From the IMG/VR virus record IMGVR_UViG_3300032931_001151, positions 62,001 through 126,000 of that record: a stretch of 64,000 nt of DNA; one strand, written 5' to 3'. Within the stretch, counting starts at the first letter, position 1. Each line of letters begins with the position of its first letter. Positions 15,522 through 62,681 of the stretch are shown here, piece by piece. Position numbers and translations under genes: made by a program. The notes under the pieces are model-generated. The model made no database searches and had not been told where the DNA came from. It saw only the letters and a program-made list of their open reading frames with translations.

Positions 15522-15525
15522 TTTA

Positions 15526-46622: not shown

Positions 46623-46646
46623 TTTTATCCTTTCTATTATTTTTAT

Positions 46647-46674: not shown

Positions 46675-46729
46675 GATTTTTCTTAAAAATCATTTTTCTC
46701 GTATATATAGTGTATAGGAGAAATACACA

Positions 46730-48054: not shown

Positions 48055-48079
48055 CTAATAATTATCTAAATTTTCATAC

Positions 48080-48107
48080 TTGACATCTCCAAAACATATG
48101 CTATACT
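48080..48107 (+). promoter_or_regulatory. sigma70-type promoter
   Basis: TTGACA 48080-48085, 16-nt spacer, TGc-TATACT 48102-48107, AAGGAG RBS. Confidence 0.75.
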
Positions 48108-48128
48108 CCGTCACACAAGGAGAAAGAA

Positions 48129-48786: not shown

Positions 48787-49557
48787 TCAATAATTACAAA
48801 GTTCATCATATTTTCTTGACATTATATCGAGCCTATTCTTAAATCCCGCATAATGTCTTAAAATATTTGTACCTTTTTTATCATAACGAAAGGAGACAAA
48901 TGAATCGTCTCCTTTTGTTGATTTGATTAGACCGCTTCGTATTATATAATTCAGTGAGGGTTGATCATACCACCATTTATAAATTTTATCATTATGATTA
49001 AAAATGGTAGATCTCCATATATCGTAAGTGCCGGTATATATAGAGTCTCTACTAATTATGTATTGTCCGGAGTTTATACCTCTAAAATCTTTTAATAAAA
49101 ATAAATCTCGATGATTAAAATATCTTGAGAAAAATGGTTTGTTGATATTCATTGTGCTCTCATAATACACGAAATCATTTGTTGGCTCGTTGAAATAATT
49201 AGTTATTTTGTTTTCACATATTATGTCGTCGTCAAGAACCATTATTTTTGAATATTTCCCAACGTCTATGTGTTCATCAATATACATTTTTAAGAACGCT
49301 GGATGAAAAACATGTTTAGGTTCTATGGTTGAAACATCATATTTGGAGAATTCTCTATGGTTATCGGTTATTACGAGAATTTCATCTTTATACTCTCCAA
49401 ATTTACGAAGACTCTTAATAAGTATTTTCGCCATATCGTAATGTTCGCAGTGTGAAGTTGATATGATACAAATTAAATTCTTCTCATTTCCGCCCAACTT
49501 TTCTAACTTATTTTTGATTATTTCTGGGTGTATCTGTGTATCTCTAATTATTCTCAT
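48787..49557 (-). CDS. GT-A glycosyltransferase (GT8-like)
   Basis: LIKSLR, VLDDDII (DxD), INSG, DQPSLN, RHYAG. Confidence 0.8.
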   Translation of the reverse strand: MRIIRDTQIHPEIIKNKLEKLGGNEKNLICIISTSHCEHYDMAKILIKSLRKFGEYKDEILVITDNHREFSKYDVSTIEPKHVFHPAFLKMYIDEHIDVGKYSKIMVLDDDIICENKITNYFNEPTNDFVYYESTMNINKPFFSRYFNHRDLFLLKDFRGINSGQYIISRDSIYTGTYDIWRSTIFNHNDKIYKWWYDQPSLNYIIRSGLIKSTKGDDSFVSFRYDKKGTNILRHYAGFKNRLDIMSRKYDELCNY

Positions 49558-49560
49558 TTA

Positions 49561-50283
49561 TTATTCTCCCGTTAGCAAATCTTTATAATCATCCTTATGT
49601 TTAAATCTTTTCATCACTTTACCTTCTATGTCTGAATAGTCATCAAGTTGTAGAGCATATTCTTTTCCTGTACAATATGTTATTAGTCCACTATTAACTA
49701 AAGTATAATCTAACCCGTTCTTATCCGTTTCTTTCTTCTTCATATGACTGTATATCTTCTCCAAATTATTTAAATATAAACATTGTGTACACCATGGCTT
49801 ACGGCTCATTCTTACTACAATCTCTTTCATTTGTTCGTTAGTTAATTTGTGTATTTGTGGATTATGGAAACAAAGTATCTCACAATCAGTCTCCCTAACT
49901 GCCTCCATTATGCTTCCAATATCATCTAAAATACATTTCCTGAATAGAACATCATCTTCTAAAAACAATATACGCTTCTCACCTCTACTCATAGCCAATT
50001 CAAGGATTTTGATGAACGATAGTTTATTCCCAACCGACCCATCTTTGTGCCTTATGGCATTGAATAATGTATAAGTAGAATTTAGTTGCTTGAATTGCCT
50101 ATTGAGGATTTCAAGCCTATCAGTCCGTTCTTCAAGATGATTGACATAAATGTTGTCAAAATATGCATTTAGGGAGTTGCTTGAAATATTAACGATACTA
50201 TCTCTCTTATCTCTCAACTCCTTTAAAATGCATTCTAAAGTTCCTCTATGAGTATGTAGATTTGAATCTCGAATCACCTTCAT
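49561..50283 (-). CDS. GT25-like glycosyltransferase
   Basis: IYVNHLEERTDR, FNAI, GNKLSF, ILFLEDD. Confidence 0.82.
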   Translation of the reverse strand: MKVIRDSNLHTHRGTLECILKELRDKRDSIVNISSNSLNAYFDNIYVNHLEERTDRLEILNRQFKQLNSTYTLFNAIRHKDGSVGNKLSFIKILELAMSRGEKRILFLEDDVLFRKCILDDIGSIMEAVRETDCEILCFHNPQIHKLTNEQMKEIVVRMSRKPWCTQCLYLNNLEKIYSHMKKKETDKNGLDYTLVNSGLITYCTGKEYALQLDDYSDIEGKVMKRFKHKDDYKDLLTGE

Positions 50284-50893
50284 AACAAATCCTCATAAAT
50301 CCGCCTATGGTCAAATCGTCTCATAATCCTATTTTTAATATTTGAATAGTCGTCCAATTGTATGGCATATTCTTTACCCGTACAATATGATATTAGTCTA
50401 CTATAAACTAAAGTGTAATCTAAACCATTCGTATTGGATTCTCTTTCCTTCACATGCTCATAAATCTTCCCTAAATTACTCAAATATAAACACTGATTAC
50501 ACCAAATCTTATGCTTTCGTCTCACGATAAGCATTTTCTTTTCGTCTTCCGTTAGTTTAACTATTTGAGGATTATGGAAACAAAGTATCTCACAATCAGT
50601 CTCTCTAACTGCCTTCATTATGCTTCCGATATCATCTAAGATGCACTTCCGAAATAGTACATCATCTTCTAAAAACAATATACGCTTCTCACCTCTACTC
50701 ATAGCCAACTCAATAATTTTGATGAAAGATAGTTTATTCCCTACCGATCCATCTTTATGTCTTATGGCATTGAATAATGTATAAGTAGAATTAAGTTGCT
50801 TGAATTGCCTATTGAGGATTTCAAGCCTATCAGTCCGTTCTTCAAGATGATTGACATAGATGTTGTCAAAATATGCATTTAGGGAGTTGCTTG
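49853..50893. repeat. direct repeat pair, 49853-50183 vs 50563-50893 (offset 710)
   Basis: 20 mismatches in about 331 nt by hand alignment. Confidence 0.9.
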
Positions 50894-50957
50894 GAGTAGC
50901 CTTCATCTCCTTTGTAGTCGGTATGATCAATTTAGGAGTTTCGTGGAGTATTTTCAT
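50280..50957 (-). CDS. GT25-like glycosyltransferase, tandem duplicate
   Basis: Same motifs; start MKILHET at 50957 overlaps upstream stop (ATGA). Confidence 0.82.
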   Translation of the reverse strand: MKILHETPKLIIPTTKEMKATPSNSLNAYFDNIYVNHLEERTDRLEILNRQFKQLNSTYTLFNAIRHKDGSVGNKLSFIKIIELAMSRGEKRILFLEDDVLFRKCILDDIGSIMKAVRETDCEILCFHNPQIVKLTEDEKKMLIVRRKHKIWCNQCLYLSNLGKIYEHVKERESNTNGLDYTLVYSRLISYCTGKEYAIQLDDYSNIKNRIMRRFDHRRIYEDLL

Positions 50958-51328
50958 TCTTTCCGTTCCCACCATTTTTCAACTTTGTATTCATCGTAAT
51001 TCAATACACAATCCCAATATTCTTCTTTACTTCTATAAACCCACATAGGAATTCTAAATCCGGCGGCAATAAAACATGGACCGGATTGGGGTGTAATAAG
51101 TAAATCTAGGCTTCGTATCATTTCTACTATCCATTTAATATCACCTTTAGTTGGCCTCCAATCTTCGACCCCTTTAGGGATATATGTATTATCTTTATTT
51201 CCTATGGCAATTATAGTATGATCTGGATATTGCTCATGGGCTTGGGCGACCATTTCATCTACTATATGATTTGGAATATCCCCTTGAGTATTTGAGTGAG
51301 TTATTAAGCCAATTAGTTTGAGTCTCAT
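50954..51328 (-). CDS. C-terminal Rossmann half of a GT9-like (GT-B) glycosyltransferase
   Basis: EMIRSLDLLITPQSGPCFIAAGFRIP resembles GT9 D..I..DSGP.H.AAA...P; start MRLKLIG at 51328. Confidence 0.75.
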   Translation of the reverse strand: MRLKLIGLITHSNTQGDIPNHIVDEMVAQAHEQYPDHTIIAIGNKDNTYIPKGVEDWRPTKGDIKWIVEMIRSLDLLITPQSGPCFIAAGFRIPMWVYRSKEEYWDCVLNYDEYKVEKWWERKE

Positions 51329-51330
51329 AA

Positions 51331-52065
51331 TTATTCCATATCCCAATATTTCTTGACCAAAATAGTATACTCTTCATTTAATTCTTTATCTAATTCTTTA
51401 TTGTATTTCTTTTTTAGTTCATAATATAATTGCGAAATTCTTTTAAACCATTTCCATTTATATTTTGCATCATTTATTAATTCCCGCACCATTTCGACGT
51501 TGCTATCATATAATTTAAATAAAATAATTTTTATTAGATCTTGGGCATTCGTACCACATACTTCTTCAAATACTTTTCCGGATTTTAACTCTTTCTCTAT
51601 TGAATTTGCCACCTCTTGATAATATGCATTAAACTCTCTATCATTGTTATACTCAGAAGATGTAACCGAACGTGGATGATAATTATCTTTCCATCCCATA
51701 TAGTTTAGAAAATGCACCACTTCATGGAATAGATCGTCTTTCATTTTCTCTACGATTTTATAGTATTCTTTATTTTCAAATTCAGCACCTAGTCCTCTTG
51801 ATATAGCATTTAAATTTATCATTGGATATTTATTACGATCTAATACCGTGAAATATCCCGGAACATTAATTCTATTTTTATTATTAGTTATGCCGACCAA
51901 AAGCGAATATTTAACTAAATATACATCTTTCTTTCCACTATTCTTGAATTCTTTTAATATATCATCAACAATATCATTTACTTGATTTCTAAAATTTTCA
52001 TCATCTATTCTTTCCACTAAAAAATGCCCATTTATATAATTCTCATAAAATTCACTAAATTTCAT
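51331..52065 (-). CDS. putative zinc metallopeptidase-like protein (HExxH), possible internal head protein
   Basis: LFHEVVH...REFNAY; start MKFSEFYE at 52065 after GAGG. Confidence 0.65.
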   Translation of the reverse strand: MKFSEFYENYINGHFLVERIDDENFRNQVNDIVDDILKEFKNSGKKDVYLVKYSLLVGITNNKNRINVPGYFTVLDRNKYPMINLNAISRGLGAEFENKEYYKIVEKMKDDLFHEVVHFLNYMGWKDNYHPRSVTSSEYNNDREFNAYYQEVANSIEKELKSGKVFEEVCGTNAQDLIKIILFKLYDSNVEMVRELINDAKYKWKWFKRISQLYYELKKKYNKELDKELNEEYTILVKKYWDME

Positions 52066-52066
52066 T

Positions 52067-53227
52067 TTATTTCCTCTCACAATTAAAATGTATATCAAAC
52101 GATTTAGGATTTGTCATGGTTGGATCCATAAATCTATAAAATCTCTTCACTCCATTCATTGTAGGCCATTCTTCTAATTTTGGATTACAACCACAATCAA
52201 TAGCATACGGTATATTTTCTCTTGGAACCCACTCAACCCCGTCAAAATACTCTAAAATACCCTTGCGAGACTCTTGGAACCACACTTTAACTGGCTTACC
52301 CGTCTTTATATAATACAAATGAGCCGCAGCAACAAACCCTATAACATCTCCAAGTAACGAGTGACCACACCAAAATCCTCTATTATTAGGTGATATATAT
52401 TTTTTATCATATTCGGCTATTAATGCATCTTTGGATCTCATACAATGAACTATTGATGGCTTTACAATCCTCTTATCGCCATTCATATAATCTTCAAATA
52501 CCCACGGTTGATACGAGGGTAGTCCACCTTTCCAATAATTAGTCCAATCGGAACACCAAAGATGTTTAGTTTTATCTAAGGTTCTTTCATATGGATCTTG
52601 CATAATATGACCAACATAAGCTAATGCGGGTTCTTCCGTGAAGTTTTTGTATCCTTTATTGTGAGCATCTTCAAAAAACTTCGTAGTTCTTTGATAGAAC
52701 TCATCAATAGCATCTTTAGAAATACCCCAAAATCCCGCATTAGTATTCCAATATTTATTTGTTGTAACCCCGTGTTCTTTCAATAGATTACAATAATCTT
52801 CTAATTTACACCCCCACCAATTGTCTCTATGTTTTGAGTTTATTGGGTTAACTTCATTCTCCATTTGTACGAAAACTTTACTATTTCCAATTTCTTTAGT
52901 CAAATCTCCGGGATTAGCAACGAAGTAACAGTCCGCATCGAGAAACACATAATAATCATAATTAAGTTTACTTACTTCATTTTTGAGGAAATGGAACTTA
53001 AACATATATAGCTTTTTATCAAATTTACCACAAGGATGCACTATAGCACCTTCAATTGAAGGTAAGTCCGTAAAAATGTGGAAGTCTTGAGTTACCCCTA
53101 CTCGTCTTGCCGATTCAACCATAGTAGAAGCCATTTTCCCATGATTCTCGGAGGCAACGGTCCAATAGCAGAATGTTTTTTTATTACTTCTTGTTATTAT
53201 TTTACCAATTGATTCTGGAAGATTCAT
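52067..53227 (-). CDS. GT-A glycosyltransferase fused to the N-terminal half of a GT9-like domain
   Basis: VFLDADC, NAGFW, EEPALA, IVH; then GHSLLGDVI...KVWF..ILEYF. Confidence 0.78.
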   Translation of the reverse strand: MNLPESIGKIITRSNKKTFCYWTVASENHGKMASTMVESARRVGVTQDFHIFTDLPSIEGAIVHPCGKFDKKLYMFKFHFLKNEVSKLNYDYYVFLDADCYFVANPGDLTKEIGNSKVFVQMENEVNPINSKHRDNWWGCKLEDYCNLLKEHGVTTNKYWNTNAGFWGISKDAIDEFYQRTTKFFEDAHNKGYKNFTEEPALAYVGHIMQDPYERTLDKTKHLWCSDWTNYWKGGLPSYQPWVFEDYMNGDKRIVKPSIVHCMRSKDALIAEYDKKYISPNNRGFWCGHSLLGDVIGFVAAAHLYYIKTGKPVKVWFQESRKGILEYFDGVEWVPRENIPYAIDCGCNPKLEEWPTMNGVKRFYRFMDPTMTNPKSFDIHFNCERK

Positions 53228-54012
53228 TTAATTCTCTTGCCTTTCCCATTGCCTTTGCACACTTGAGGTTCACAATTCTGGTATTCACACCAACTACATA
53301 GAACTGATGGGCATGGCTTCCATTTTGACACATCATCAACGTCAAGGGCTAATATGGTGTTTATACCATTCCCTATTCTATTTTCAGCATCTTCAATGGA
53401 ATCAGCTTCTAAAATTTCTTCTTTTACAAAATCGTCTATCTCAAATCCCGAACCAGCACATAGATATACTCCTTGAAATTTAAGTTTTTTAGGAGTCTTA
53501 CCTGTTACTTTAGATATAAGATAATAATAGAAAGCAAATTGTGCCGTATGATCTCCCGTTTTTTTAGAAGTTTTATAATCTACCACACACCAATTCTCTT
53601 CTTCATCTCTATATAAAACGTCTATTTTTCCGGTTACATCTATATAAGGACTTAAAGCAATTCTAAATTCCTTTTCATGATAAACTTTTGAACTATTTGC
53701 CAATTTAGCATTATAAAACGCTTCAATTCTCTTAAAGGCTAATGGGAGTTTAGCCGCATATTCTTGAGTTAATATATATTTTTGATTATATAAATTAAAT
53801 AATCTTTTAATTTCATCTTGACCACCACCAAAGTAATTTTCCGCAATTTCATGGCATAAATTGCCGAAATCTGTAACATCATTATCTTTCTCTACTCGCT
53901 TCTTTTCTACATATTTTAAATACCAAGAATACCGACACTTTTCTATAGCACCCAAACTAGAGTGAGATAATGTAAATACTGTAGTATCGTGAGTGGTCTT
54001 AGTTTTTTGCAT
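53224..54012 (-). CDS. RecB/Cas4-like PD-(D/E)XK exonuclease
   Basis: LSHSS....CRY, G..CHE, GKID, VDYKT, QFAFY, C.WC...C; start MQKT at 54012 after AGGA. Confidence 0.88.
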   Translation of the reverse strand: MQKTKTTHDTTVFTLSHSSLGAIEKCRYSWYLKYVEKKRVEKDNDVTDFGNLCHEIAENYFGGGQDEIKRLFNLYNQKYILTQEYAAKLPLAFKRIEAFYNAKLANSSKVYHEKEFRIALSPYIDVTGKIDVLYRDEEENWCVVDYKTSKKTGDHTAQFAFYYYLISKVTGKTPKKLKFQGVYLCAGSGFEIDDFVKEEILEADSIEDAENRIGNGINTILALDVDDVSKWKPCPSVLCSWCEYQNCEPQVCKGNGKGKRIK

Positions 54013-54038
54013 AATATTTCCTATTATGCTATTATACC

Positions 54039-54278
54039 TCAAATTATATGGATTTCAACACCCATTTCAGTTAATTCAAGAATATCTTCGGTAAAGTATT
54101 TCGACTCTATTACTAATGTATCGGTTTCAAATATATAATCATCAAGATCATCACCCGATACTTCTTCAAAATCTTTCCCATATACATCCGACATAAACAA
54201 TAATATCTTTTTTGTTTTAGATTCATTTTCTTCAAATATAGCAAATGAAGTTTCTTCTAAATCGGAAAAGTAAAGCAT
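54039..54278 (-). CDS. acidic hypothetical protein
   Basis: AGGAG RBS. Confidence 0.7.
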   Translation of the reverse strand: MLYFSDLEETSFAIFEENESKTKKILLFMSDVYGKDFEEVSGDDLDDYIFETDTLVIESKYFTEDILELTEMGVEIHII

Positions 54279-54287
54279 TGTAATCTC

Positions 54288-54716
54288 CTAGTAAAAGAAA
54301 TGTAAATGGTTGTTATTGCTATTTATTATAGAAATGCCATTATAATGAAATTTATTATCTCTCATTTCTTTTATAAGCTCTTTATACTTACTACTTTTTA
54401 TTACTTTTCCTATTACATCATATCTATATTCACTCTCGGGGGTCTTTTTAATAGTTTCTTCAATCTCCTTAAAGTTGCTATTGATTTGTCTCCAAGAATT
54501 AATTAACGTATTTATTTCTACGATGTGTTCAATTATGCAACAAAATTCCCATAATCTGGCCTTAGAATCTATTGTTCCATTTTTAGTATATTCTTGTATA
54601 TCTTTTTTGTCTTCATCTAAAAGATATTTATTTTCAATAAAGATGTTTCTAAATGATGAAATAAACCTAACCATCTTTAGAATGGTTTGAATATCTATTA
54701 GGAGTGGTTCAGGCAT
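54288..54716 (-). CDS. hypothetical protein
   Basis: Overlapping operon packing. Confidence 0.7.
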   Translation of the reverse strand: MPEPLLIDIQTILKMVRFISSFRNIFIENKYLLDEDKKDIQEYTKNGTIDSKARLWEFCCIIEHIVEINTLINSWRQINSNFKEIEETIKKTPESEYRYDVIGKVIKSSKYKELIKEMRDNKFHYNGISIINSNNNHLHFFY

Positions 54717-54945
54717 TTTGAAGAACTTCTATCAAATAATCTATTTGAGATGAAATAAGAGTTTTTGAATATTTTCCATTTTCAAATTTATAATCAACTA
54801 TAAAAAACTTATTAAATACATTGTAAACCATATTACAATTATAATATTCAAGTACGGTTAAATTTGGATGTATTCTACTTCTTTTTCCTTTTTCAAGAGT
54901 AATATATTCTTCTTGAATCGGGATTGTGTTAATCATTATTTGCAT
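54709..54945 (-). CDS. hypothetical protein
   Basis: Operon packing. Confidence 0.6.
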   Translation of the reverse strand: MQIMINTIPIQEEYITLEKGKRSRIHPNLTVLEYYNCNMVYNVFNKFFIVDYKFENGKYSKTLISSQIDYLIEVLQNA

Positions 54946-54947
54946 AA

Positions 54948-55226
54948 TTATGCCTTTTGTATAAGTTCTTCAACCTTTTCTTTCGGAATATTAACTTTAA
55001 AAGCAAATCTAATATCTTCAATATGTCTTAAATCAAGTACAACGTCCACCGAATGAATATCAACTTCTCCTATTCTTTTTTTAGCTTCATTCGTTATCTT
55101 AACTCTTAAGTAGTGTAAAGTATCAGCACTAAAGAATTTAGACTCTTTAGAGTATTCGGAGAGAACTTCGTCAATTATCTCTCCTAATATTTTTTGCTTT
55201 TCTGGTTCTAGTTTAAATTCTTCCAT
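54948..55226 (-). CDS. hypothetical protein
   Basis: AAGGA RBS. Confidence 0.7.
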   Translation of the reverse strand: MEEFKLEPEKQKILGEIIDEVLSEYSKESKFFSADTLHYLRVKITNEAKKRIGEVDIHSVDVVLDLRHIEDIRFAFKVNIPKEKVEELIQKA

Positions 55227-55238
55227 ATATCCTTTCTA

Positions 55239-56579
55239 TTATTTCACGGGGAGCGGTGGAACCGCATTATCTAATCCTTCTTCCTCTGGAGTTGCTTCTG
55301 GAGTTTCTGGTGTTGCTTCAGGAGTTGCTTCGGTAGGAGTTTCCGATGTTGCTTCGGGTGTTGCTTCAGGTGACTCCCCTTTAGTCGGCGTCGTTTCGGC
55401 GGCAACTTCCTCTGGCTTGGACTCTTCTTGATCTTTTATATCACCTTCGCCTAAGTTCTGAGAATTAAATATAACATATACTTGACCCATAGAACCCGAT
55501 TCTTGATTATATACACTCGTTAACGTTCTAAAAATATTACTTCTAACGAATATAGGATCTTCTTTATTTGATTTTATAAACTCGTGTACTAATGACGGAA
55601 CCATTACGTTAACTTTATCGAGTGGAATCTTATAGTTCTCACCTTCTTCAGTAACCATTGCCCCTATATCAATCAAATTTGCTCTAATAGCTGGAGCATT
55701 TGAGAAGTTTATTTTGATAGTTCTCAAAAAGTTTATAGCCTTTGATTTATCTTGCCAATTCTTTCCGAAATTCGTTTCAAGGTATGCATTTATTTTATCA
55801 TATGCTTGGCGTTTCATATCGGTTGAAAGTTCATTGTTAGCATTATATATTGGAACATTGGAATTATGAATTATTATGTTCTTCTCTCTCTTATCCATTA
55901 AAGGGTATGTTTTTCTTAATTCTCTATTTTTATCTCTTAACATATCTCTTTGAGAAGGAGTAAGTAAATTCATAACATCTTTAGAAGAGATTCCAGATTT
56001 TAAATCGTCTTCTGGTATAAGTTTCTTCAAATCAAGTCCGACATTGACATATTTAAATTTTTCTAATCTAATATTGTTTTCATTGGTTAAGCTATAATCA
56101 ACATCTACGTCTCCACTATCAGCGAACATCTTTGTTACTTTTTGCTCAGGGGTTTCTTGCGGTTCAACTGGAGATTCGGGGGTAATTTCAGGCTCTACTG
56201 GAGCATCTTCCGTTGGTAGTTCTTTCGTATCATCTTTAGTTTCTTTAGGTGGTGGAGTTTCATCTTTACTTATCTCAGCGTCTATCATATCATCTAAAGA
56301 TTCTTCCCCTTCTGCCTCAATTATTCCAAATTGAGTTTCGCCTGGCTCTTTGGCTACACATATTGGACCCGCATAACCACCGCCTCCACCTTCCGATTGA
56401 CTTAATGACGATTGACCGGTTCCATATAATTTTGGACCAGCGCCGAATAATACACCCTCGGCAATTATGGCCTTCACTTTATTTCTAACTGGTGGTTCTA
56501 TCACGACTTGAGTCTTAACCGGCTCCAATTTGATAGGTTTAGGTGACTCATAAAATAATGATTTAATTTTGTTCGACAT
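55239..56579 (-). CDS. acidic Pro/Glu/Thr-rich late protein (prohead core/internal-protein candidate)
   Basis: Late-promoter motif upstream; PEAT repeats at about 55283-55372. Confidence 0.65.
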   Translation of the reverse strand: MSNKIKSLFYESPKPIKLEPVKTQVVIEPPVRNKVKAIIAEGVLFGAGPKLYGTGQSSLSQSEGGGGGYAGPICVAKEPGETQFGIIEAEGEESLDDMIDAEISKDETPPPKETKDDTKELPTEDAPVEPEITPESPVEPQETPEQKVTKMFADSGDVDVDYSLTNENNIRLEKFKYVNVGLDLKKLIPEDDLKSGISSKDVMNLLTPSQRDMLRDKNRELRKTYPLMDKREKNIIIHNSNVPIYNANNELSTDMKRQAYDKINAYLETNFGKNWQDKSKAINFLRTIKINFSNAPAIRANLIDIGAMVTEEGENYKIPLDKVNVMVPSLVHEFIKSNKEDPIFVRSNIFRTLTSVYNQESGSMGQVYVIFNSQNLGEGDIKDQEESKPEEVAAETTPTKGESPEATPEATSETPTEATPEATPETPEATPEEEGLDNAVPPLPVK

Positions 56580-56618
56580 GGTTAAAAGTACCTTTTTGTA
56601 TTATAGCCTCTTTTAACT

Positions 56619-56626
56619 TATTTATA
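56619..56626 (-). promoter_or_regulatory. T4-type late promoter TATAAATA
   Basis: Exact octamer on minus strand in the gap between dUTPase and the 446-aa gene. Confidence 0.55.
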
Positions 56627-56632
56627 TAATAT

Positions 56633-57082
56633 TTATTGACCAGACGACCCGAATCCTTTAGTCCCTCTAGAATCATTGGTTGGCATAGCATCAAGTTGTT
56701 TCAATGTAACTTGAGGTACTCTTTTAAAGATCATTTGGGCTATTTTTGATCCTTTTGGTAGGTTTACTACTTCCTTACTAGTATTCAATAGAATAACCTT
56801 AATATTATTATGGTAAGTGTAATCTATAGTTCCAGGAGTATTTACTATAGTTAACCCCAATTTTAGAGCATTTCCGCTCCTTGGGCGAATTTGAGCTTCC
56901 CAAATATCATTTGAAGTGGTCATGTCAACTACGACCCCCGTATCTACTAACTTTCGTTCTCCTGGATTAATAGATACTTCCTCAACGGAGGACAAATCCC
57001 ATCCCGCATCCGTAGGATTGGCCTTGGATGGCATTTTAGCATCCAAATGATTTAAATAGACTCCGAAAGTAATATCTTCCAT
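56633..57082 (-). CDS. dut: trimeric dUTPase
   Basis: AGWDL, RPRSG, NTPGTID..Y, KIAQM, RGTKGFGSSG. Confidence 0.96.
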   Translation of the reverse strand: MEDITFGVYLNHLDAKMPSKANPTDAGWDLSSVEEVSINPGERKLVDTGVVVDMTTSNDIWEAQIRPRSGNALKLGLTIVNTPGTIDYTYHNNIKVILLNTSKEVVNLPKGSKIAQMIFKRVPQVTLKQLDAMPTNDSRGTKGFGSSGQ

Positions 57083-57107
57083 AATTATTTCCTTAATTGG
57101 GTTTTCT

Positions 57108-57168
57108 AATTATAGCATAAAAATAAATCCAAAATATAAAAAATTTGTACTAGCTCTATGCTATAATT
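57108..57168. promoter_or_regulatory. divergent extended -10 promoters (TATGCTATAATT on both strands)
   Basis: Perfect 12-bp inverted repeat 57108-57119 / 57157-57168 between dut and the GT25 genes. Confidence 0.7.
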
Positions 57169-57194
57169 GCTACATCTTAATATAGGAAAATAAT

Positions 57195-58109
57195 ATGATA
57201 AAGGCAAAATTCTATCTAATAAATCTTGAAAAAGATACCGCTAAATTAGAGTGGTGTAAAAAAGTAATTGGCGATAGATTTGAATTTGAAGTATTTAAGG
57301 CTATTGAAGTGGGAGAAAAAGAAGATATAAAAAACTTTAAAACTAAGGGAGAATATGGGTGCTTCCAAAGTCATATGAAAGTAATGGAAAAGTGTCTAAA
57401 AGAAAAAGATAGTTATGATTTATTTTTCATCATGGAAGATGATATATTATTTGTAGAGAATTTTGATAAGTATTTCAACGATGTTGTGGATAAACTTGTT
57501 AAAACCGACTACGATGTATGTTTGTTTTATGATTGGTCTAAAACCGACGATTTAACAGAAGATATAATTTCACTTAAAAAAACCGATTCGTTATATTTAC
57601 ATTTTTATGCTATACATCCTAATAAAATAGGAAAAATGCTTTGGTATGGTAATACATATTGGTGCCCATTAGATTATATTATAAAGCATGAAAGTAGTCA
57701 AGGAAATATAAACGCAATAACAACATCTAAAATTCTTGTTAAACAAAATAGATTTTTTGATTCTGCATTAACTGGATATGGATTTAGAGGAGAGCTAAAC
57801 GGCGTTCTTGATTGTGTATATCCGTATGATGACATGTATTCTAAAGAATGTGAATTAATTGGAAAATGGAAACTTTACAAGACTAATTTTAGAGATATAT
57901 TAGAATTTTTTATTGACGGATCCGTTACTTGCGAACAATCAAAACTTACGGGTGGGAGATGGAGAATGATACACAACGAGGTAATAATAACATTTTTACA
58001 ACCCGAAGTATTTGAAATAATCTATTTAAAAAATAATAAAGTATATAGTAAAATGCCGGGAGAAAGTTGGGATACTATGAAAACTTTTATTATAAAAGAG
58101 GGAAAATGA
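57195..58109 (+). CDS. GT25-like glycosyltransferase + C-terminal beta domain
   Basis: YLINLEKD, FKAI, GCFQSH, IMEDD, HFYAI; LIGKW...GGRWR. Confidence 0.85.
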   Translation: MIKAKFYLINLEKDTAKLEWCKKVIGDRFEFEVFKAIEVGEKEDIKNFKTKGEYGCFQSHMKVMEKCLKEKDSYDLFFIMEDDILFVENFDKYFNDVVDKLVKTDYDVCLFYDWSKTDDLTEDIISLKKTDSLYLHFYAIHPNKIGKMLWYGNTYWCPLDYIIKHESSQGNINAITTSKILVKQNRFFDSALTGYGFRGELNGVLDCVYPYDDMYSKECELIGKWKLYKTNFRDILEFFIDGSVTCEQSKLTGGRWRMIHNEVIITFLQPEVFEIIYLKNNKVYSKMPGESWDTMKTFIIKEGK

Positions 58110-59884
58110 GAATTAAATTCTATCTAATAAATCTTGAAAAAGATATATCTAAACTTAATTGGTGCAAAAAAATAATAGGAAATATGTTTGAATTTGAAGT
58201 ATTTAAAGCAATTGTACCCAAAAGTAGAGGAGAATTCCCATCCATAGGGATTCGTGGTTGTTTTGAGAGCCATTTAGCATTATATAAAGAAATTGATAAA
58301 ATTAAAAATGATATAGATGTTGCTATTATAATGGAAGACGATATATGTTTTTCTAGTGAATTTGAATTAAATTTTAAATCTCTAGTTGATCGATTGCTAT
58401 ATAAAGAATATGACATATGTCATTTTTATGATGTACACCAAAAAGATATTGACTGGCCTATTACATTTAGAGAAAGTAATACCCACAATACTCATTTTTA
58501 TGCCATAAACCCAAAAAGTGCTCTAAAAATATTCAATAAAATAAAAGATTATGACGTTGATATTGATCATGTGTTGCATACTAAAAGTAAATTAAAAGAA
58601 ATAAATACACTGTCAACAACTAAAACCATAGTTAAACAGAATAGATATTTTATGTCTAGTGTTACTGCCCAAGGTTTTAGAACCGATATACAATATAGTT
58701 ATGATTTTATATATCCATATGATGATCTTTTCAAAGATGAATGTCCTTTAATTGGAAAATGGCATTTCTCAAAAATAAATTATAAAGAAGAATGGATTTT
58801 TAATGAAAACGGATCTATAATTTGTAAAAATACAGGTGGAAGATGGAGAATAATTAACGGAGTTCTTTCAATTACATTTGATGACCCAAGATATTGGGAA
58901 ACGTTTCCAATTAAAGATGGAAAATCATATACAGCAATGAAAGGATCTAGTTGGGATAATAGAGACATCTATTTAATTAAAGACTCTTCTACGTACAAAG
59001 AAAGTGGAGTAAAATTCTTTTTAATAAATCTTGAAAAAGATAAAGAAAAATTAAAATGGTGTAAAAAAATAATAGGAGATAGATTTGAATATGAAGTATT
59101 TAATGGGATTGTGCCGGAGGACAAAGGTGAATTCCCAACTATAGGAATGAGAGGATGTCACGAAAGTCATACTAAAATATGGGAAATGGCAAAAAATATG
59201 ACAGATTGTAGTTTAGTCATAATAATGGAAGATGATATAGTGCTATCCAATAGTTTTGATTCTAAATTTAAAATGGCTTTGGCGGCAATGAAGCAACAAG
59301 ATTTTGAAATAGGGCTATTTTACGATTGCTTCCGTGAAGAATTTACGGAAGAAAATATATTCTTAGTTGAAAGTTCTTCGTATAATTTACATTTTTATGC
59401 AATTAAACCTCACACCGTAGAAAAATGCCTAGATTTAGTAAAAGGGTCTTGTTGCGATATAGATCACACTTTACATATGGGTTCTATAGATAAAAAAATA
59501 AGAATGGTATCAACTTCACGAAATCTTGTTGCTCAAAATAGATATTTTGATTCTAATGTAACAAAAACGGGATATAGAGAGGAAAATAGAAGCTTTCCTT
59601 TTATATACCCATATGATGACATATATTCAAAAAAATGCCCATTAATAGGAAAATGGTATTTTAGAAAAATTAATTTTAGAGATACGTTTGAATTTAAAGA
59701 GAATGGGACCGTAAAATGTATGGCACCCGGAGGAAGATGGAGAAAAGTTGGAAATGAAATCGTTATAACTTTTGAAAATAGTCAATGGAAAGAATACATA
59801 TATTTGCTAGAAGGAAATACTTACACCGTAATGCAAGGGGTAAGTTGGGATAAAAACAATATTATTGTAACTAAATTAAATTAG
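58106..59884 (+). CDS. tandem double GT25-like glycosyltransferase
   Basis: Two full copies of the same unit; start MRIKFY at 58106 (ATGA overlap, GAGGG RBS). Confidence 0.85.
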   Translation: MRIKFYLINLEKDISKLNWCKKIIGNMFEFEVFKAIVPKSRGEFPSIGIRGCFESHLALYKEIDKIKNDIDVAIIMEDDICFSSEFELNFKSLVDRLLYKEYDICHFYDVHQKDIDWPITFRESNTHNTHFYAINPKSALKIFNKIKDYDVDIDHVLHTKSKLKEINTLSTTKTIVKQNRYFMSSVTAQGFRTDIQYSYDFIYPYDDLFKDECPLIGKWHFSKINYKEEWIFNENGSIICKNTGGRWRIINGVLSITFDDPRYWETFPIKDGKSYTAMKGSSWDNRDIYLIKDSSTYKESGVKFFLINLEKDKEKLKWCKKIIGDRFEYEVFNGIVPEDKGEFPTIGMRGCHESHTKIWEMAKNMTDCSLVIIMEDDIVLSNSFDSKFKMALAAMKQQDFEIGLFYDCFREEFTEENIFLVESSSYNLHFYAIKPHTVEKCLDLVKGSCCDIDHTLHMGSIDKKIRMVSTSRNLVAQNRYFDSNVTKTGYREENRSFPFIYPYDDIYSKKCPLIGKWYFRKINFRDTFEFKENGTVKCMAPGGRWRKVGNEIVITFENSQWKEYIYLLEGNTYTVMQGVSWDKNNIIVTKLN

Positions 59885-62019
59885 TCACAATCTATCGGAA
59901 TCCAAGAGGGTAAATCTACATCCGGAGCAATTATAACATTATAATCGGTTTGGATTAGTTTACTTGCAACGCAACTATTAGTTGGACTCCAATCAATATC
60001 TTCTAATTTATCAACTGCCGGAATTGGCCCTTCCATTGAAACTTCCCAAGCACCCACTCCATTATTAGTAGTTGGATTCCATGTTGATGTATACCACCAA
60101 TTCTTGTATGAATATACTATAGTATTTGCCGAAACGCTTAAACCGGTTAATGTACTTCTAGTATTAGATACGAACATCATCATATTATAATAATCATCGT
60201 AAGAAGAGCTACTAGACGAAACACAACAGTCTGTATCTGGTGGTGGATCCGTATTAACATCATAGTAATCGTCAAATGTTTCGTATATATCGGTGCCGGT
60301 AGGAATATAAACTACTAATTTATATTGTATAGCGGGACCTTCACCGCAAGGATAATCTTCCCAACTTCCATATATTGTTCCGTATGGAGTATCTTGAGAA
60401 AAATCATATGATCCTAATACGACTGCCGTCCCAGTACTAACATCGTCTATACTAATATCCCAATCTGGTAGATCCCAACAATTCACATAAAAGTAAACAT
60501 CATACGTGTCATATAATATAGAAGGACCCGTGCTACTAGAAGATGAACTAGAAGAAGAAGAAGAAGATGAACTAGAAGAAGATGAACTTGAGGATGAGCT
60601 AGAAGATGAACAACAATTGGTTCCACCATTTAATACTATAATTTTACCTTTATTTTCCGTATTTATACTTGCACATCCTTGAACATTTATACTTTTAAAT
60701 AAAAAGGTATATGATGGCCTTCCATAACTTTCATATTTTTTATCTTTACCATAATAAACCGATGCGGTATTAGTAGTTAAAGTTCTATTATTCCCATAAA
60801 CTAATGATTCATTTATAAATAACCCGTTATTTTTAAAATAGTTCATTAAATTTGAGTTACTACTTGTGGCTGGACACACACTTACTACGGTCATCCCCGA
60901 ACTTGATAAAGAACTAGCATCAATACTATCCAAAATCTTATCAACATCACTACAAGAAGCACAATCATATATTGGAGTGCTTAATTCTATATAACACCCA
61001 TTTTGGTTTATATTCACTGAAGGATAGCCTCGATATAAAGCTCTATTCAAGAAGCTATCCGATGGAGTTGAAATATCAACTATTAATCCACTATTATTAG
61101 TTACTTCCGAGTATACCGTATTTGATATATCAATATCACCAACACAATTAATATTTAGTTGACTCGTCGAACAATTATTAGTACATGCCGGAGTCAATTT
61201 TCCAGTAGTAGTATATGAATCTATATAATAATCATTATTAACCGAATTATTAACCGTTCTATTGATATTGCTAATTCCTTTAAAAAACCATATAGATCCA
61301 AATTGCCAAGTATATCTTTCCGGAATTACTTCAAGTATACTTTTGTTTGAATGTATTTCTGATTCTTTATCCGCCCACTTTTTAGTCCCTAAGCCAACCC
61401 CGTTTCCGGTAGTTAACGAATAAAAGTTTCCATTATACCAAGTATCAATTTCTTTAACGGCACTTACAAAATTAGCCCCTTTACCACATGATGTTATTGT
61501 GAAACATGGTTCGGACACAACGATATTTGGAGAGCAATTTTGTTCAACGGAAATAGAGTTATTAGTAATTGAAGGGCTAATTCCCGCATTAGGAAAGCTA
61601 CATTGTGGTATTTCTTGCCCTTGTATATTAGCAAAGAAGAATATTTTTTCACAATTTGATTGATTGGAAGTACTTCCAAATATAGAATCACTTGGATCGT
61701 ATACCGTTGGACTAGCATATAAAAATTGAGGATCGGGATTTCCGGGAGAACCTAGAAATATAGGAGCATATATATTTGAATTTATTGTTTTAAAACAAGT
61801 CCCAGGTAAATTTGTATTACTTATATACGATAATGATTCTTTTATTTTCTTAAGATTATTAACTGGAGGCATAGCATTGGCAAAAACTAACTCATTTTGT
61901 GGCAATATATCATTTGTTCTATACGGTGTTTGTGTACTAGCATCTAACAAACTACTATTTTTATTAGTAGTCGTCGTATTTAGAGATGTTAATCGCTTTT
62001 TATTTCCGTATAATGACAT
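59881..62019 (-). CDS. Cys/Ser-rich putative virion protein with poly-Ser linker
   Basis: 26 consecutive Ser codons at 60532-60609; follows gp3-like gene. Confidence 0.7.
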   Translation of the reverse strand: MSLYGNKKRLTSLNTTTTNKNSSLLDASTQTPYRTNDILPQNELVFANAMPPVNNLKKIKESLSYISNTNLPGTCFKTINSNIYAPIFLGSPGNPDPQFLYASPTVYDPSDSIFGSTSNQSNCEKIFFFANIQGQEIPQCSFPNAGISPSITNNSISVEQNCSPNIVVSEPCFTITSCGKGANFVSAVKEIDTWYNGNFYSLTTGNGVGLGTKKWADKESEIHSNKSILEVIPERYTWQFGSIWFFKGISNINRTVNNSVNNDYYIDSYTTTGKLTPACTNNCSTSQLNINCVGDIDISNTVYSEVTNNSGLIVDISTPSDSFLNRALYRGYPSVNINQNGCYIELSTPIYDCASCSDVDKILDSIDASSLSSSGMTVVSVCPATSSNSNLMNYFKNNGLFINESLVYGNNRTLTTNTASVYYGKDKKYESYGRPSYTFLFKSINVQGCASINTENKGKIIVLNGGTNCCSSSSSSSSSSSSSSSSSSSSSSSSSSTGPSILYDTYDVYFYVNCWDLPDWDISIDDVSTGTAVVLGSYDFSQDTPYGTIYGSWEDYPCGEGPAIQYKLVVYIPTGTDIYETFDDYYDVNTDPPPDTDCCVSSSSSSYDDYYNMMMFVSNTRSTLTGLSVSANTIVYSYKNWWYTSTWNPTTNNGVGAWEVSMEGPIPAVDKLEDIDWSPTNSCVASKLIQTDYNVIIAPDVDLPSWIPIDCD

Positions 62020-62021: not shown

Positions 62022-62681
62022 TTAAACCTTTTTAATAACATATCTATCGGATGGAACTATACCGGAATGCACCCATGTAATTGGTAATATAATCTTATCC
62101 GGTTCACTTTCTTTTAGTTGAATTTGGCCTATTGATGCGGGATGTAAATCTTTTATTTCCATTTCAAATACTTTTTCTTGGTGATTATTCAATATAAGTA
62201 ATGTGCCATTTACATAGAATCTCTTATAATACTCATATTCTTGAAACTTCATATGTTCTTCGGGATTATGTGCCGCCAATAACCAAAAATACATTAATCT
62301 ATATACAAACCAATCTTCATCATTCATTACATTCATTGTTAAATCGCCAAACTCCAATTTACCCATAACATGCTTTACCGTAGCCATTTGAGTTTGCATA
62401 GATGCATACCCCACGTTCATTTCTGGCAAGTCTACATTTTGTACAAATAATAAAAAGTTTTTAAGGTCAGTATTTCGTTCTACGAAAACTTCTTGTCTTA
62501 TTTTCTCTAACTCTATATTATTCTTTCCAAATTGCAATTGTAAGTTTAATAAATATTCATCTGTAAATTTAGAAAGAAGATAACTAGTTGGAATGGAATC
62601 TAATATGAATATATACTTATTAGTATGAGATTCATTAATGAGTAACTCTGAATTAAATACTATTTGATCACAAATGGCCAT
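62022..62681 (-). CDS. tail-tube-fold protein, T4 gp3-like tail completion protein
   Basis: FVQNVDLP, KLEFGDLTMNVMNDED..VY..MYFWL, GTLLILNN, LHPASIG.IQL. Confidence 0.78.
   Translation of the reverse strand: MAICDQIVFNSELLINESHTNKYIFILDSIPTSYLLSKFTDEYLLNLQLQFGKNNIELEKIRQEVFVERNTDLKNFLLFVQNVDLPEMNVGYASMQTQMATVKHVMGKLEFGDLTMNVMNDEDWFVYRLMYFWLLAAHNPEEHMKFQEYEYYKRFYVNGTLLILNNHQEKVFEMEIKDLHPASIGQIQLKESEPDKIILPITWVHSGIVPSDRYVIKKV

What the first reader, a model, noticed from the sequence alone, without database searches (positions are those of the whole stretch)
48787..59884. Eight glycosyltransferase domains between two tail-gene blocks: candidate virion glycosylation system
Seen: five GT25-like, two GT-A (GT8-like) and one split GT9-like domain, lying between gp5 and gp3/hub genes, with no flippase, polymerase or TM anchors evident. 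Nearby virion proteins carry (GTS)n and poly-Ser tracts. Knowledge: GT8/GT9/GT25 build LPS/LOS-type oligosaccharides, and phage-encoded glycosylation of capsid and tail proteins is known in some actinobacteriophages. Inference: a pathway that builds a glycan chain on Ser/Thr tags of the particle. Alternatives are host LPS remodelling for superinfection exclusion or DNA hypermodification.
Basis: inference. Interest (0 to 1): 0.75.

Follow-up and report, generated by a model that had tools for sequence, protein, structure and literature searches.

The report
Phage tail-region glycosyltransferase island
An uncultured 214-kb T4-like phage carries eight soluble sugar-transferase domains among its baseplate genes, next to tail proteins with conserved Ser/Thr-rich tags. 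This fits glycosylation of the virus particle but does not prove it.

Summary
Window 48787-59884 encodes eight glycosyltransferase (GT) domains:
- five GT25-like, three of them fused to a lipocalin-like barrel;
- one GT8-like;
- one GT6/GT8-like GT-A;
- one compact GT9-like GT-B.

In 12 related loci the GT9-like domain is continuous. Here a zincin-like ORF splits it exactly at the inter-domain linker, and a complex model supports reassembly of the halves (0.86 against 0.00 for controls).

The interval is not purely GT. It also holds a PD-(D/E)XK nuclease, a dUTPase, small ORFs and a conserved acidic protein.

None of the GTs has a TM segment. The genome has no Wzx/Wzy-like protein and no known route to a hydroxylated DNA base. 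It does have GDP- and dTDP-type sugar genes and about ten more GTs elsewhere.

P-(GTS)n-G-x-P tags and poly-Ser occur only in four tail-region proteins. The tag is kept in all 55 homologues of a small Ig-like protein, as a disordered loop. A T4-type late-promoter motif precedes the minus-strand GT string.

Co-occurrence across relatives is mixed: one complete phage has the GT cassette without these tags.

Virion O-glycosylation is the best reading (about 0.4). Host LOS/envelope remodelling remains a serious rival. DNA glycosylation is unlikely.

The parts
48787..49557 (-). GT8-like GT-A glycosyltransferase (256 aa), DDD motif
   Evidence: Pfam GT8 23.9 bits against a cut-off of 24.3. A homologue lies next to the GT-A/GT9 gene in L011. 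No TM segment.
49561..50283 (-). GT25-like glycosyltransferase, tandem paralogue a (240 aa)
   Evidence: Pfam GT25 30.4 bits. The EDD motif aligns to the GT25 modules. A homologous domain is fused to the GT9-like domain in G006.
50280..50975 (-). GT25-like glycosyltransferase, tandem paralogue b (231 aa)
   Evidence: Pfam GT25 28.9 bits. The central ~300 nt are about 90-100% identical to paralogue a, and the ends about 45-75%.
50954..51328 (-). C-terminal (donor-binding) half of the split GT9-like GT-B domain (124 aa from ATG 51328)
   Evidence: Aligns to the C-terminus of intact homologues. Junction sequence read. Predicted to bind the other half, ipSAE 0.86 against 0.00.
51331..52065 (-). 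Inserted ORF B (244 aa), HExxH zincin-like, absent from all intact relatives
   Evidence: The Atlas places it in a phage-only family with structural leads to Peptidase_U49/M48/SprT/M78. No paralogue in the genome.
52067..53227 (-). GT-A (GT6/GT8-like, DAD motif) domain plus the N-terminal half of the GT9-like GT-B domain (386 aa)
   Evidence: 93 homologues. AF2 model of P0002 and VIA/Foldseek matches.
53224..54042 (-). PD-(D/E)XK nuclease; not a GT; syntenic in relatives
   Evidence: Pfam E 4e-23. Homologues in L006, L030, L036-L038.
54039..55226 (-). Four small ORFs (79, 142, 78, 92 aa), conserved with the slot
   Evidence: Similar-sized ORFs (87, 148, 89, 93 aa) stand in the same order in L006. 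Similarity was scored only for the 92-aa ORF in L015-L017 and the 78-aa ORF in L037/L038.
55239..56579 (-). 446-aa acidic protein with a Thr/Pro/Glu-rich repeat tail; always follows the tube-like gene in relatives
56619..56626 (-). TATAAATA, a T4-type late-promoter-like motif 39 nt upstream of the 446-aa gene
   Evidence: Genome-wide, about 22 of 40 copies lie 16-41 nt upstream of same-strand starts, mostly in the structural module.
56633..57082 (-). dUTPase; not a GT
   Evidence: Pfam E 1.3e-25.
57195..58109 (+). GT25 domain plus C-terminal lipocalin-like barrel, module 1 (304 aa)
   Evidence: Pfam GT25 50.4 bits. Alignment of the three modules. Atlas places the C-terminal domain as lipocalin-like. 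TGcTATAAT lies upstream.
58106..59884 (+). Two further GT25 + lipocalin-like modules in one 592-aa protein
59881..62019 (-). 712-aa Cys-rich protein with a 26-Ser run; every homologue found that extends past the conserved N-terminal ~400 residues carries poly-Ser runs
   Evidence: No run was found in the 411-aa L031 homologue, which matches only the N-terminal ~400 residues.
62022..62681 (-). Tube-like paralogue (219 aa); the main tube and sheath lie outside the window
   Evidence: PHROG tail tube E 1e-19..
62691..63077 (-). 128-aa IgV-like protein with a (GTS)4 loop
   Evidence: 55 homologues all carry the tract. AF2 shows a disordered FG-type loop. Ig-like fold matches.
26864..27799 (-). 311-aa tail-region protein ending in P-(GTS)3-G-Q-P
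28652..33676 (-). 1674-aa tail-fibre-like protein with an internal P-TTGSS(GTS)3GS-P tract
43491..45125 (-). gp5-like baseplate hub/spike; left border of the island, followed by gp25 and gp6 homologues
   Evidence: Pfam Phage_base_V is weak. gp25 and gp6 homologues. Syntenic in L006, L037, L038.

Best explanation
The island is the tail-module part of a phage-autonomous, cytoplasmic glycan-building system. Soluble GT-A and GT-B enzymes use sugar nucleotides, some made by the phage itself. They add and extend short O-linked glycans on Ser/Thr-rich segments of tail and baseplate proteins before assembly. Candidate acceptor segments are the P-(GTS)n-G-x-P loops, the poly-Ser runs and the Thr/Pro-rich tails.

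The conserved core is a GT-A / GT9-like / GT25-like (or GT8-like) cassette. The GT9-like domain is the candidate initiating enzyme, by analogy with protein heptosyltransferases. The three GT25 + lipocalin-like modules are lineage-specific additions.

Shown: the domains, their solubility, the split and its predicted reassembly, the synteny, tag conservation and exposure, the late-promoter motif, the sugar-nucleotide genes, and the absence of DNA-hydroxylation enzymes.

Inferred: the acceptor, the order of action, and that any glycan is attached to the virion.
For: - Eight GT domains keep DxD/EDD or G-x-x-GD motifs and have no TM segment.
- The minus-strand string 56579->48787 has overlapping or abutting genes, a T4-type late motif in front, and no minus-strand terminator-like site before 46082.
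- The same slot between the tube-like/poly-Ser block and gp5-gp25-gp6 holds different GT sets in L006, L030, L013 and L036-L038.
- Ser/Thr tags occur only in four tail-region ORFs of 236, and they use mixed synonymous codons.
- All 55 homologues of the 128-aa protein keep a (TSG)n tract of 2-13 triplets, down to 32% identity. It is a disordered loop of an Ig-like fold.
- The GT-A gene directly adjoins the poly-Ser protein gene in L006 and L030. In L009 it adjoins non-homologous poly-Ser and TPTPT proteins.
- Foldseek's top hits include SRRP glycosyltransferases GlyA/D/E/F and protein heptosyltransferases TibC/Aah.
- The GT25 modules' best PDB sequence hit is Mimivirus R655.
- The phage encodes Gmd, a fucose-synthase-like enzyme, DegT, a 4,6-dehydratase + RmlD-like pair, and about ten more GTs.
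Against: - No chemical evidence exists.
- VIA-align ranks the LPS heptosyltransferases WaaC/WaaF slightly above TibC, so the fold does not choose the acceptor.
- GT8/GT9/GT25 together are the classic LOS-core set.
- The slot also collects an HNH, a Zn-ribbon HEG-like gene, a PD-(D/E)XK nuclease and a dUTPase. It may simply be a hyperplastic region.
- The plus-strand GT25 genes have a sigma70-like extended -10 element.
- Relative G002 (62% complete) and G003 (32%) carry the tags, but no GT25 or GT-A/GT9-like (P0002) match was found in either. For G002, no homologue of any window GT was found.
- Complete phage G006 has the GT-A/GT9/GT25-like cassette but no (TSG)n protein and no poly-Ser.
- The tagged 128-aa protein sits among baseplate-hub genes, so it might be internal.
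Confidence: 0.4

Rival explanations
1. Host envelope remodelling. The soluble GT9-, GT8- and GT25-like enzymes act at the inner face of the membrane on the host's lipid A-core/LOS, or on another lipid-linked glycan. This changes the cell surface during infection, for example to block superinfection, avoid adsorption of progeny to debris, or evade grazers. The Ser/Thr tracts would be plain flexible linkers.
For: - The family set GT8/GT9/GT25 is the LOS-core set (Pfam names). The best VIA matches of the GT-B domain are WaaC and WaaF.
- LOS-core GTs also lack TM segments, so one search does not discriminate.
- Lipocalin-like barrels on the GT25 modules could bind a lipid or glycolipid.
- The plus-strand GT25 unit has a sigma70-like promoter.
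- Large T4-like marine phages carry many such genes, and the literature reads them as cell-wall modification (PMC12801897).
- The cassette occurs in G006 without the tags.
Against: - Five domains lie behind a late-promoter-like motif together with tail-module genes. That is late for exclusion.
- The cassette moves between phages of 28-56% GC. A conserved host core acceptor across such hosts is less likely than a phage-borne one.
- No Wzx/Wzy/WecA-like membrane protein is present. Kdo and ADP-heptose pathway genes were not looked for.
- The tags are conserved in sequence, not only in composition.
Confidence: 0.25
2. No single pathway. The interval is a hyperplastic accessory-gene slot where mobile endonucleases have gathered unrelated GTs with different acceptors (proteins, envelope, small molecules). 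'Eight domains' is then a count, not a system.
For: - HNH, DUF723/Zn-ribbon, PD-(D/E)XK and dUTPase genes, plus an ORF inserted into a GT, share the slot.
- GT content differs in every relative.
- There are two strands and two promoter types.
- A second GT island lies 70 kb away.
Against: - GT-A and the GT9-like domain are fused or adjacent in most of the phage loci found with them, 8 of the 12 contexts. They recur with GT25-like or GT8-like partners, which indicates a functional cassette.
- The minus-strand genes are tightly packed.
Confidence: 0.2
3. DNA hypermodification. The GTs glycosylate hydroxylated pyrimidines in phage DNA to evade restriction.
For: T4-like ancestry (for relative G002). 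A dUTPase and a nuclease lie in the interval. Phage GTs of several folds glycosylate DNA (PMC13326640; bioRxiv 10.1101/2023.12.21.572611).
Against: No thymidylate-synthase homologue, which is needed for 5hmC, 5hmU and 5hoC (PMC13326640). No Tet/JBP dioxygenase, though the Tet_JBP search had no positive control. No C5 methyltransferase. The record is about 90% complete.
Confidence: 0.03

Closest known systems
Virion O-glycosylation of mycobacteriophages (Freeman et al. 2023, as summarised in PMC12619734)
   Same: Phage-encoded soluble GTs encoded beside structural genes. Ser/Thr-rich acceptor segments on virion proteins.
   Different: There the glycans sit on C-terminal extensions of the capsid and tail-tube subunits, made by one or two GTs. 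Here no capsid or tube tags were found. The tags are internal loops or runs on baseplate and tail accessory proteins. There are 8 GT domains locally and about 18 genome-wide, and the host is unknown (probably not an actinobacterium, given 32% GC).
Serine-rich-repeat adhesin glycosylation in Gram-positive cocci (GtfA/B plus GlyA-G; PMC5207161, PMC6973325)
   Same: Cytoplasmic, stepwise O-glycosylation of long Ser-rich tracts by soluble multi-domain GT8-type enzymes. GlyA/D/E/F are Foldseek's top Swiss-Prot hits.
   Different: No GtfA/B-type GT4 initiator was identified. The similarity is at fold level only, with 10-11% identity.
Bacterial autotransporter heptosyltransferases TibC/Aah (GT9-like protein O-heptosyltransferases)
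   Same: GT9-type GT-B fold, Z 14.8. Soluble. Ser acceptor on a folded protein.
   Different: The domain here is about 235 aa against about 400. No sequence-level match. The iron-finger and dodecamer features were not examined. WaaC and WaaF match equally well.
LOS/LPS core glycosyltransferases (WaaC/WaaF GT9; RfaI/J, LgtC GT8; LgtB/Lic2A GT25)
   Same: The same three CAZy-type families together. All are peripheral cytoplasmic enzymes.
   Different: No neighbouring waa/kds genes were seen in the window. The genes lie in a phage tail module behind a late-type promoter. The GT9-like domain is truncated and fused to a GT-A domain.
GT-rich 'LPS / cell-wall modification' clusters of large T4-like cyanomyoviruses (P-SSM2, S-SCSM1, S-SCSM2R; PMC12801897)
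   Same: A T4-like phage over 200 kb with many GTs (GT2, GT10, GT11, GT25) and NDP-sugar epimerases. Function untested.
   Different: No detectable protein similarity to GenBank phages. About 18 GT domains against the 13 called a record there. A link to conserved peptide tags has not been described there.
Giant-virus autonomous glycosylation (chlorovirus A064R-type multi-domain GT+MT; Mimivirus R655/R699)
   Same: Virus-encoded multi-domain GT (and GT-methyltransferase) fusions plus own sugar-nucleotide synthesis. R655 is the best PDB sequence hit of the GT25 modules. GT9-like-MTase fusions occur among homologues.
   Different: Eukaryotic viruses. The comparison with A064R rests on memory and was not tested here.
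Alg13/Alg14-type two-polypeptide GT-B enzymes
   Same: A GT-B fold divided at the inter-domain linker into acceptor-side and donor-side polypeptides that reassemble. The model here supports binding.
   Different: Here the split is recent and unique to this phage (0 of 12 relatives). It was caused by insertion of an unrelated ORF.

Membership tests
CAZy/Pfam GT25 (PF01755) | Profile score above Pfam's gathering cut-off | tested here: met
   Five domains score 28.9-73.9 bits against a cut-off of 24. The two minus-strand copies match only profile positions 2-42.
CAZy/Pfam GT25 (PF01755) | GT-A acidic (DxD-type) motif retained | tested here: met
   IMEDDI in all three modules. LEDDV in both paralogues.
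Pfam GT8 (PF01501) | Profile score above the gathering cut-off | tested here: inconclusive
   48787-49557: 23.9 bits against 24.3, E 3.5e-5, covering the DxD region. No PDB sequence hit.
GT9 heptosyltransferase family (PF01075) | Sequence-profile membership | tested here: not met
   No Pfam or NCBIfam hit for 52067-53227 or 50954-51346. A domain profile finds no GT9 chain in the PDB.
GT9 heptosyltransferase family (PF01075) | GT-B fold superposable on WaaC/WaaF, with an N-terminal G-x-x-GD motif | tested here: met
   VIA Z 16.1 (WaaC), 15.4 (WaaF), 14.8 (TibC) over model residues 265-502. The LLGD motif is conserved.
GT6-type retaining GT-A | Fold match over the whole catalytic domain | tested here: met
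   BoGT6a Z 15.7 and ABO transferases Z about 14.5 over residues 1-259. This is fold only, at 10-13% identity.
Actinobacteriophage-type virion glycosylation | GT genes adjacent to virion structural genes | tested here: met
Actinobacteriophage-type virion glycosylation | Ser/Thr-rich C-terminal extensions on the major capsid and tail-tube subunits | tested here: not met
   The only tracts in the genome are in four other tail-region ORFs. One of them, the 311-aa protein, is C-terminal.
Actinobacteriophage-type virion glycosylation | Glycans detected on virion proteins | not testable with these tools
   Uncultured phage. No sequencing run was listed.
Phage DNA glycosylation systems | An enzyme that creates a hydroxyl acceptor on a base (thymidylate-synthase homologue, or C5-methyltransferase plus Tet/JBP) | tested here: not met
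   No match in the ~90%-complete genome. The Tet_JBP search had no positive control.
Wzx/Wzy- or ABC-dependent surface polysaccharide pathway | Polytopic flippase, polymerase or initiating phosphoglycosyl transferase | tested here: not met
   A hydropathy scan finds one polytopic ORF, the tape-measure-like protein. This is a heuristic, not a profile search.
Two-polypeptide GT-B (Alg13/14-like) | Break at the inter-domain linker, and association of the halves | tested here: met
   The break maps between residues ~365 and 377 of the P0002 model. ipSAE 0.86 against a best control of 0.00; the mark was reached by 58 of 80 solved complexes and 2 of 110 mismatched pairs. Own alignments were used, so those counts hold only roughly.

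The most novel reading that the evidence does not exclude
P-(GTS)n-G-x-P loops and poly-Ser runs are genetically portable glycosylation tags. A mobile GT-A / GT9-like / GT25-like cassette reads them in a cosmopolitan, uncultured lineage of T4-like aquatic jumbo phages. The phage then coats its baseplate and tail accessory proteins with complex glycans built from sugar nucleotides it makes itself. This would be the first autonomous virion-glycosylation machinery of giant-virus complexity in a tailed phage outside the actinobacteriophages. The compact 235-aa GT9-like domain would be a new protein O-glycosyltransferase family.
Probability: 0.3. Interest if true: 0.8.

Novelty: new variant of a known kind. 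Interest (0 to 1): 0.6.

Why it matters
- Large aquatic T4-like phages are known to hoard glycosyltransferases, but what these enzymes act on has stayed open. The default reading is host LPS remodelling.
- This locus offers a concrete alternative that can be tested by cloning: defined peptide tags on small, expressible tail proteins, next to a compact conserved GT cassette.
- If the tags are acceptors, virion glycosylation would extend from actinobacteriophages to a widespread uncultured lineage. That would bear on adsorption, particle stability, and grazing or immune recognition.
- It would also supply new soluble protein-O-glycosylation enzymes and a short sequon for glyco-engineering.
- The naturally split GT-B domain is a small bonus example of gene fission at a domain linker caused by insertion of an ORF.

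Tried and rejected
- GenBank phages hold nothing similar by DNA or protein, apart from one weak hit to an unannotated metagenomic phage.
- Single-protein scans of viral contigs found nothing.
- A word-indexed search with the GT25 module returned only itself. The exhaustive profile search was needed.
- I considered that the phage is a 'moraphage' (PMC12619734). It lacks HSP70, so this is not supported.
- I considered a collagen triple helix for (GTS)n, because one homologue hits Pfam Collagen. For the 128-aa protein I rejected it: the tract is a disordered hairpin loop that returns to the same beta-sandwich.
- PDB sequence searches for the A, C, GT8-like and GT9-like domains were empty.
- No sequencing run was listed, so no expression data were available.
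Alignment A2 was too diverse for a locus scan.
- The IMG/VR label 'provirus' is not borne out. The shared gene content with T4-like G002, the late-promoter motif pattern and an 18-tRNA block fit a lytic T4-like jumbo phage.
- An enzyme-substrate complex prediction was not run.

Full report
**What the window is.**
- It is bases 62001-126000 of a 214,200-bp IMG/VR virus record, about 90% complete and about 32% GC.
- Nothing in GenBank phages resembles it, by DNA or by the proteins tried.
- A partial relative, G002, shares 55 proteins with it. G002 carries T4-type Gp23, portal, gp15, gp32 and baseplate families.
- The genome ends in a block of 18 tRNAs.
- TATAAATA, the T4 late-promoter motif, is rarer than chance overall: 11 copies in the window against 23 expected. 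About 22 of the 40 genomic copies lie 16-41 nt upstream of a same-strand start, mostly in the structural module.
- I therefore treat it as an uncultured lytic T4-like jumbo phage. The 'provirus' label looks like an artefact.

**The observation.** Going down the minus strand from 56579:

| Coordinates | Product |
|---|---|
| 55239-56579 | 446-aa acidic protein |
| 54039-55226 | four small ORFs |
| 53224-54042 | PD-(D/E)XK nuclease |
| 52067-53227 | gene A, 386 aa |
| 51331-52065 | ORF B, 244 aa |
| 50954-51328 | gene C, 124 aa |
| 50280-50975 and 49561-50283 | two tandem GT25-like genes |
| 48787-49557 | GT8-like gene |

- These genes overlap or abut.
- On the plus strand, 57195-58109 and 58106-59884 encode three tandem modules. 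Each is a GT25 domain followed by a ~100-aa domain. The modules are 42-44% identical to one another.
- Pfam supports all five GT25 calls above its cut-off. GT8 misses its cut-off by 0.4 bits.
- The acidic motifs are intact.
- The tandem GT25-like pair is about 90-100% identical over a central ~300 nt and about 45-75% at the ends. That is the mark of gene conversion.
- No protein in the interval has a TM-like segment.
- So the count of eight domains stands. The interval also contains seven or eight genes that are not GTs, including a dUTPase.

**The split gene.**
- Gene A has 93 homologues. About 260-aa proteins match its first two thirds. Proteins of 220-470 aa, some fused to SAM methyltransferases, match its last 100 residues at 56-73% identity. 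Proteins of 486-577 aa match all of it and continue.
- Aligned with six of those, A and C together cover the full length. A ends at '...FDIHFNCERK' and C resumes at 'LKLIGLITHSNTQGD'. The homologues bridge the gap with a handful of residues, 4-9 in the six aligned.
- The DNA reads: A, TAA, one base, ATG of B; then B, TAA, two bases, ATG of C.
- B is an HExxH protein from a phage-only family. It has no paralogue in the genome.
- The intact homologue P0002 models at pLDDT 93.4. Residues 1-259 are a GT-A domain closest to GT6 enzymes (Z 15.7). Residues 265-502 are a compact GT-B domain closest to GT9 heptosyltransferases (WaaC 16.1, WaaF 15.4, TibC 14.8).
- The break falls in the linker between the two Rossmann halves.
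- A complex model puts C against residues 291-386 of A, with ipSAE 0.86 against 0.00 for the best control. The mark was reached by 58 of 80 solved complexes and 2 of 110 mismatched pairs. My own alignments were used, so those counts hold only roughly.
- In 12 other loci the two halves are always contiguous. The split is therefore recent, and the model gives no sign that it is disabling.

**Where the island sits.** Relatives show a conserved order:

1. sheath, tube, T4_baseplate protein, tape-measure-like protein;
2. three further genes and a ~67-aa ORF;
3. the (TSG)n Ig-like protein, a second tube-like protein, a ~420-aa acidic protein and a ~93-aa protein;
4. the poly-Ser protein;
5. GT genes, small ORFs, a PD-(D/E)XK nuclease and an HNH gene;
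6. gp5, gp25 and gp6.

- Our sheath and main tube lie just outside the window.
- The GT content of the slot changes from phage to phage:
  - L006 has the fused 503-aa GT, a DUF5672 protein and a GT17.
  - L030 has separate GT-A and GT9-like genes.
  - L036-L039 have 777-980-aa fusions plus a GT25.
  - L013 has a 1053-aa DUF5672-GT17-methyltransferase-GT25 module next to a radical-SAM gene.
- GT-A and the GT9-like domain are fused or adjacent in most contexts. In the complete 220-kb, 56%-GC phage G006 the GT9-like domain is fused to a homologue of our GT25-like paralogues.
- The core is thus a mobile GT-A/GT9-like/GT25-like cassette. The three GT25 + lipocalin-like modules have only about seven relatives with the same architecture among 1.8 billion representatives.

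**The tags.**
- In 236 ORFs, runs of eight or more Ser/Thr/Gly (with at least five Ser/Thr) occur in four, all in the tail module.
- Three share the frame P-(GTS)3-4-G-x-P, written with mixed synonymous codons. The Ser run of the 712-aa protein mixes TCN and AGY codons. Selection is therefore on the peptide, not the result of DNA slippage.
- All 55 homologues of the 128-aa protein, down to 32% identity, keep a (TSG)n-type tract at the same place, with 2 to 13 triplets.
- The AF2 model is a seven-strand IgV-like sandwich. The tract is a disordered loop (pLDDT below 50) at the tip of the last hairpin, the position of a CDR3.
- Homologues of the 712-aa protein carry poly-Ser, up to ten runs. The exception is the 411-aa L031 homologue, which matches only the N-terminal ~400 residues.
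- The GT-A gene directly follows that protein's gene in L006 and L030. In the unrelated L009 lineage it abuts a 326-aa TPTPT protein and a non-homologous 1045-aa poly-Ser protein. In L011 a 629-aa protein with GSSGTSGTSGTP lies 4 kb from the GT.

**Tests of the rivals.**

*DNA glycosylation.*
- The known routes to a hydroxyl on a base need either a thymidylate-synthase homologue (PMC13326640) or a methyltransferase plus a 5mYOX/TET enzyme (bioRxiv 10.1101/2023.12.21.572611).
- None is found. The Tet_JBP search had no positive control.

*Lipid-linked export.*
- The only polytopic protein is the tape-measure-like one.

*Sugar supply.*
- The phage encodes Gmd, a fucose-synthase-like reductase and a DegT aminotransferase.
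- It also encodes a 4,6-dehydratase with an RmlD-like partner, a pair that G002 shares.
- A second island at genome 192.9-201.8 kb holds NodZ-, GT2-, GT10-, GT7C-, GT29-, GT21- and TOD1-like genes.
- That gives about 18 GT domains in all. Thirteen was recently called a record for a marine phage (PMC12801897).

*Host LOS remodelling.*
- This cannot be excluded. The three families are the LOS-core set, those enzymes are soluble too, and WaaC/WaaF fit the fold as well as TibC does.

**Timing.**
- A TATAAATA lies in the 53-nt gap upstream of the 446-aa gene, 39 nt from its ATG. No minus-strand terminator-like hairpin follows until 46082-46042.
- On that basis five GT domains would be made late, together with tail proteins.
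- The plus-strand GT25 unit instead has TGcTATAAT, an extended -10 element, in its 112-nt leader. That suggests host-polymerase, possibly early, transcription.
- Both readings are inferences from motifs.

- Tag family and cassette together: this phage, L006, L030 and G004.
- Tags without GT25 or P0002 (GT-A/GT9-like) matches: G002 (62% complete) and G003 (32% complete). For G002 no homologue of any window GT was found. G002 does have a nucleotidyltransferase, a UDP-galactopyranose mutase and a weak MptE/Maf-like gene among its tail-fibre genes.
- Cassette without tags: the complete G006, and no tract within 10 kb in L036-L042.
- The sample is small and mostly fragmentary.

**Verdict.**
It is supported by position, probable late timing, conserved exposed tags, gene adjacency in two lineages, and the failure of the DNA rival.
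- It is unproven. Host-envelope remodelling (about 0.25) and 'no single pathway' (about 0.2) remain open.
- Relative to known systems, it is a new variant of phage virion glycosylation and of the GT-rich islands of large T4-like aquatic phages.

Noticed in passing
outside the window: genome 188895-201789 and 177827-180152 (loci L029, L028): A second, larger glyco-island. It holds Gmd, a fucose-synthase-like enzyme, DegT, an AsnB-like amidotransferase, and NodZ-, GT2 (x2)-, TOD1/MUCI70-, GT10-, GT7C (x2)-, GT29- and GT21-like genes. A 4,6-dehydratase + RmlD-like pair lies beside a homologue of G002's gp32-family protein and is conserved in relative G002.
   Followed up: partly
window 51331-52065 (-): A 244-aa HExxH (zincin-like) ORF inserted precisely into the linker of the GT9-like domain. 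RBS, stop and start codons are nested with both halves. It belongs to a phage-only family and is absent from all 12 intact relatives.
   Followed up: partly
window 49561-50975 (-): Tandem GT25-like paralogues whose central ~300 nt are about 90-100% identical while their ends are about 45-75%. This points to recent gene conversion.
   Followed up: partly
window 46089-48785: An HNH endonuclease (177 aa, 65% identical in L013), a 386-aa DUF723/Zn-ribbon protein on the opposite strand, and a 218-aa protein with an N-terminal signal-like peptide (homologue in L013). A 17-bp-stem terminator-like hairpin lies at 46082-46042.
   Followed up: no
window 55285-55372, inside 55239-56579 (-): A 12-nt tandem repeat encodes a (T-P-E-A)-type Thr/Pro/Glu-rich tail on the conserved 446-aa acidic protein. 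This is another possible O-glycosylation or spacer segment.
   Followed up: no
genome-wide; in the window at 2187, 8005, 43472, 56619 and others: TATAAATA is depleted overall but strand-matched, and it lies 16-41 nt upstream of many structural-gene starts. The pattern fits T4-type late promoters.
   Followed up: partly
outside the window: genome 208273-214085: A block of 18 tRNA genes. One has anticodon CUA (ARAGORN calls it 'Pyl'), i.e. a potential amber suppressor.
   Followed up: no
L013:47-3208 and P0098 (L014): The GT25 + lipocalin-like module occurs fused to DUF5672 + GT17 + an FkbM methyltransferase (1053 aa, next to a radical-SAM gene). It also occurs fused directly to a radical-SAM domain (541 aa).
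   Followed up: no
G002 15115-23976 (L018/L019): In a relative that lacks our GTs, a nucleotidyltransferase, a UDP-galactopyranose mutase, two unannotated 240/300-aa ORFs and a weak MptE/Maf-like protein sit between tail-fibre genes.
   Followed up: partly
L009:10811-11791 (-): A 326-aa protein made almost entirely of Thr/Pro/Ser repeats (mucin-like), convergent with and 4 nt from a standalone GT-A gene in an unrelated phage lineage.
   Followed up: no
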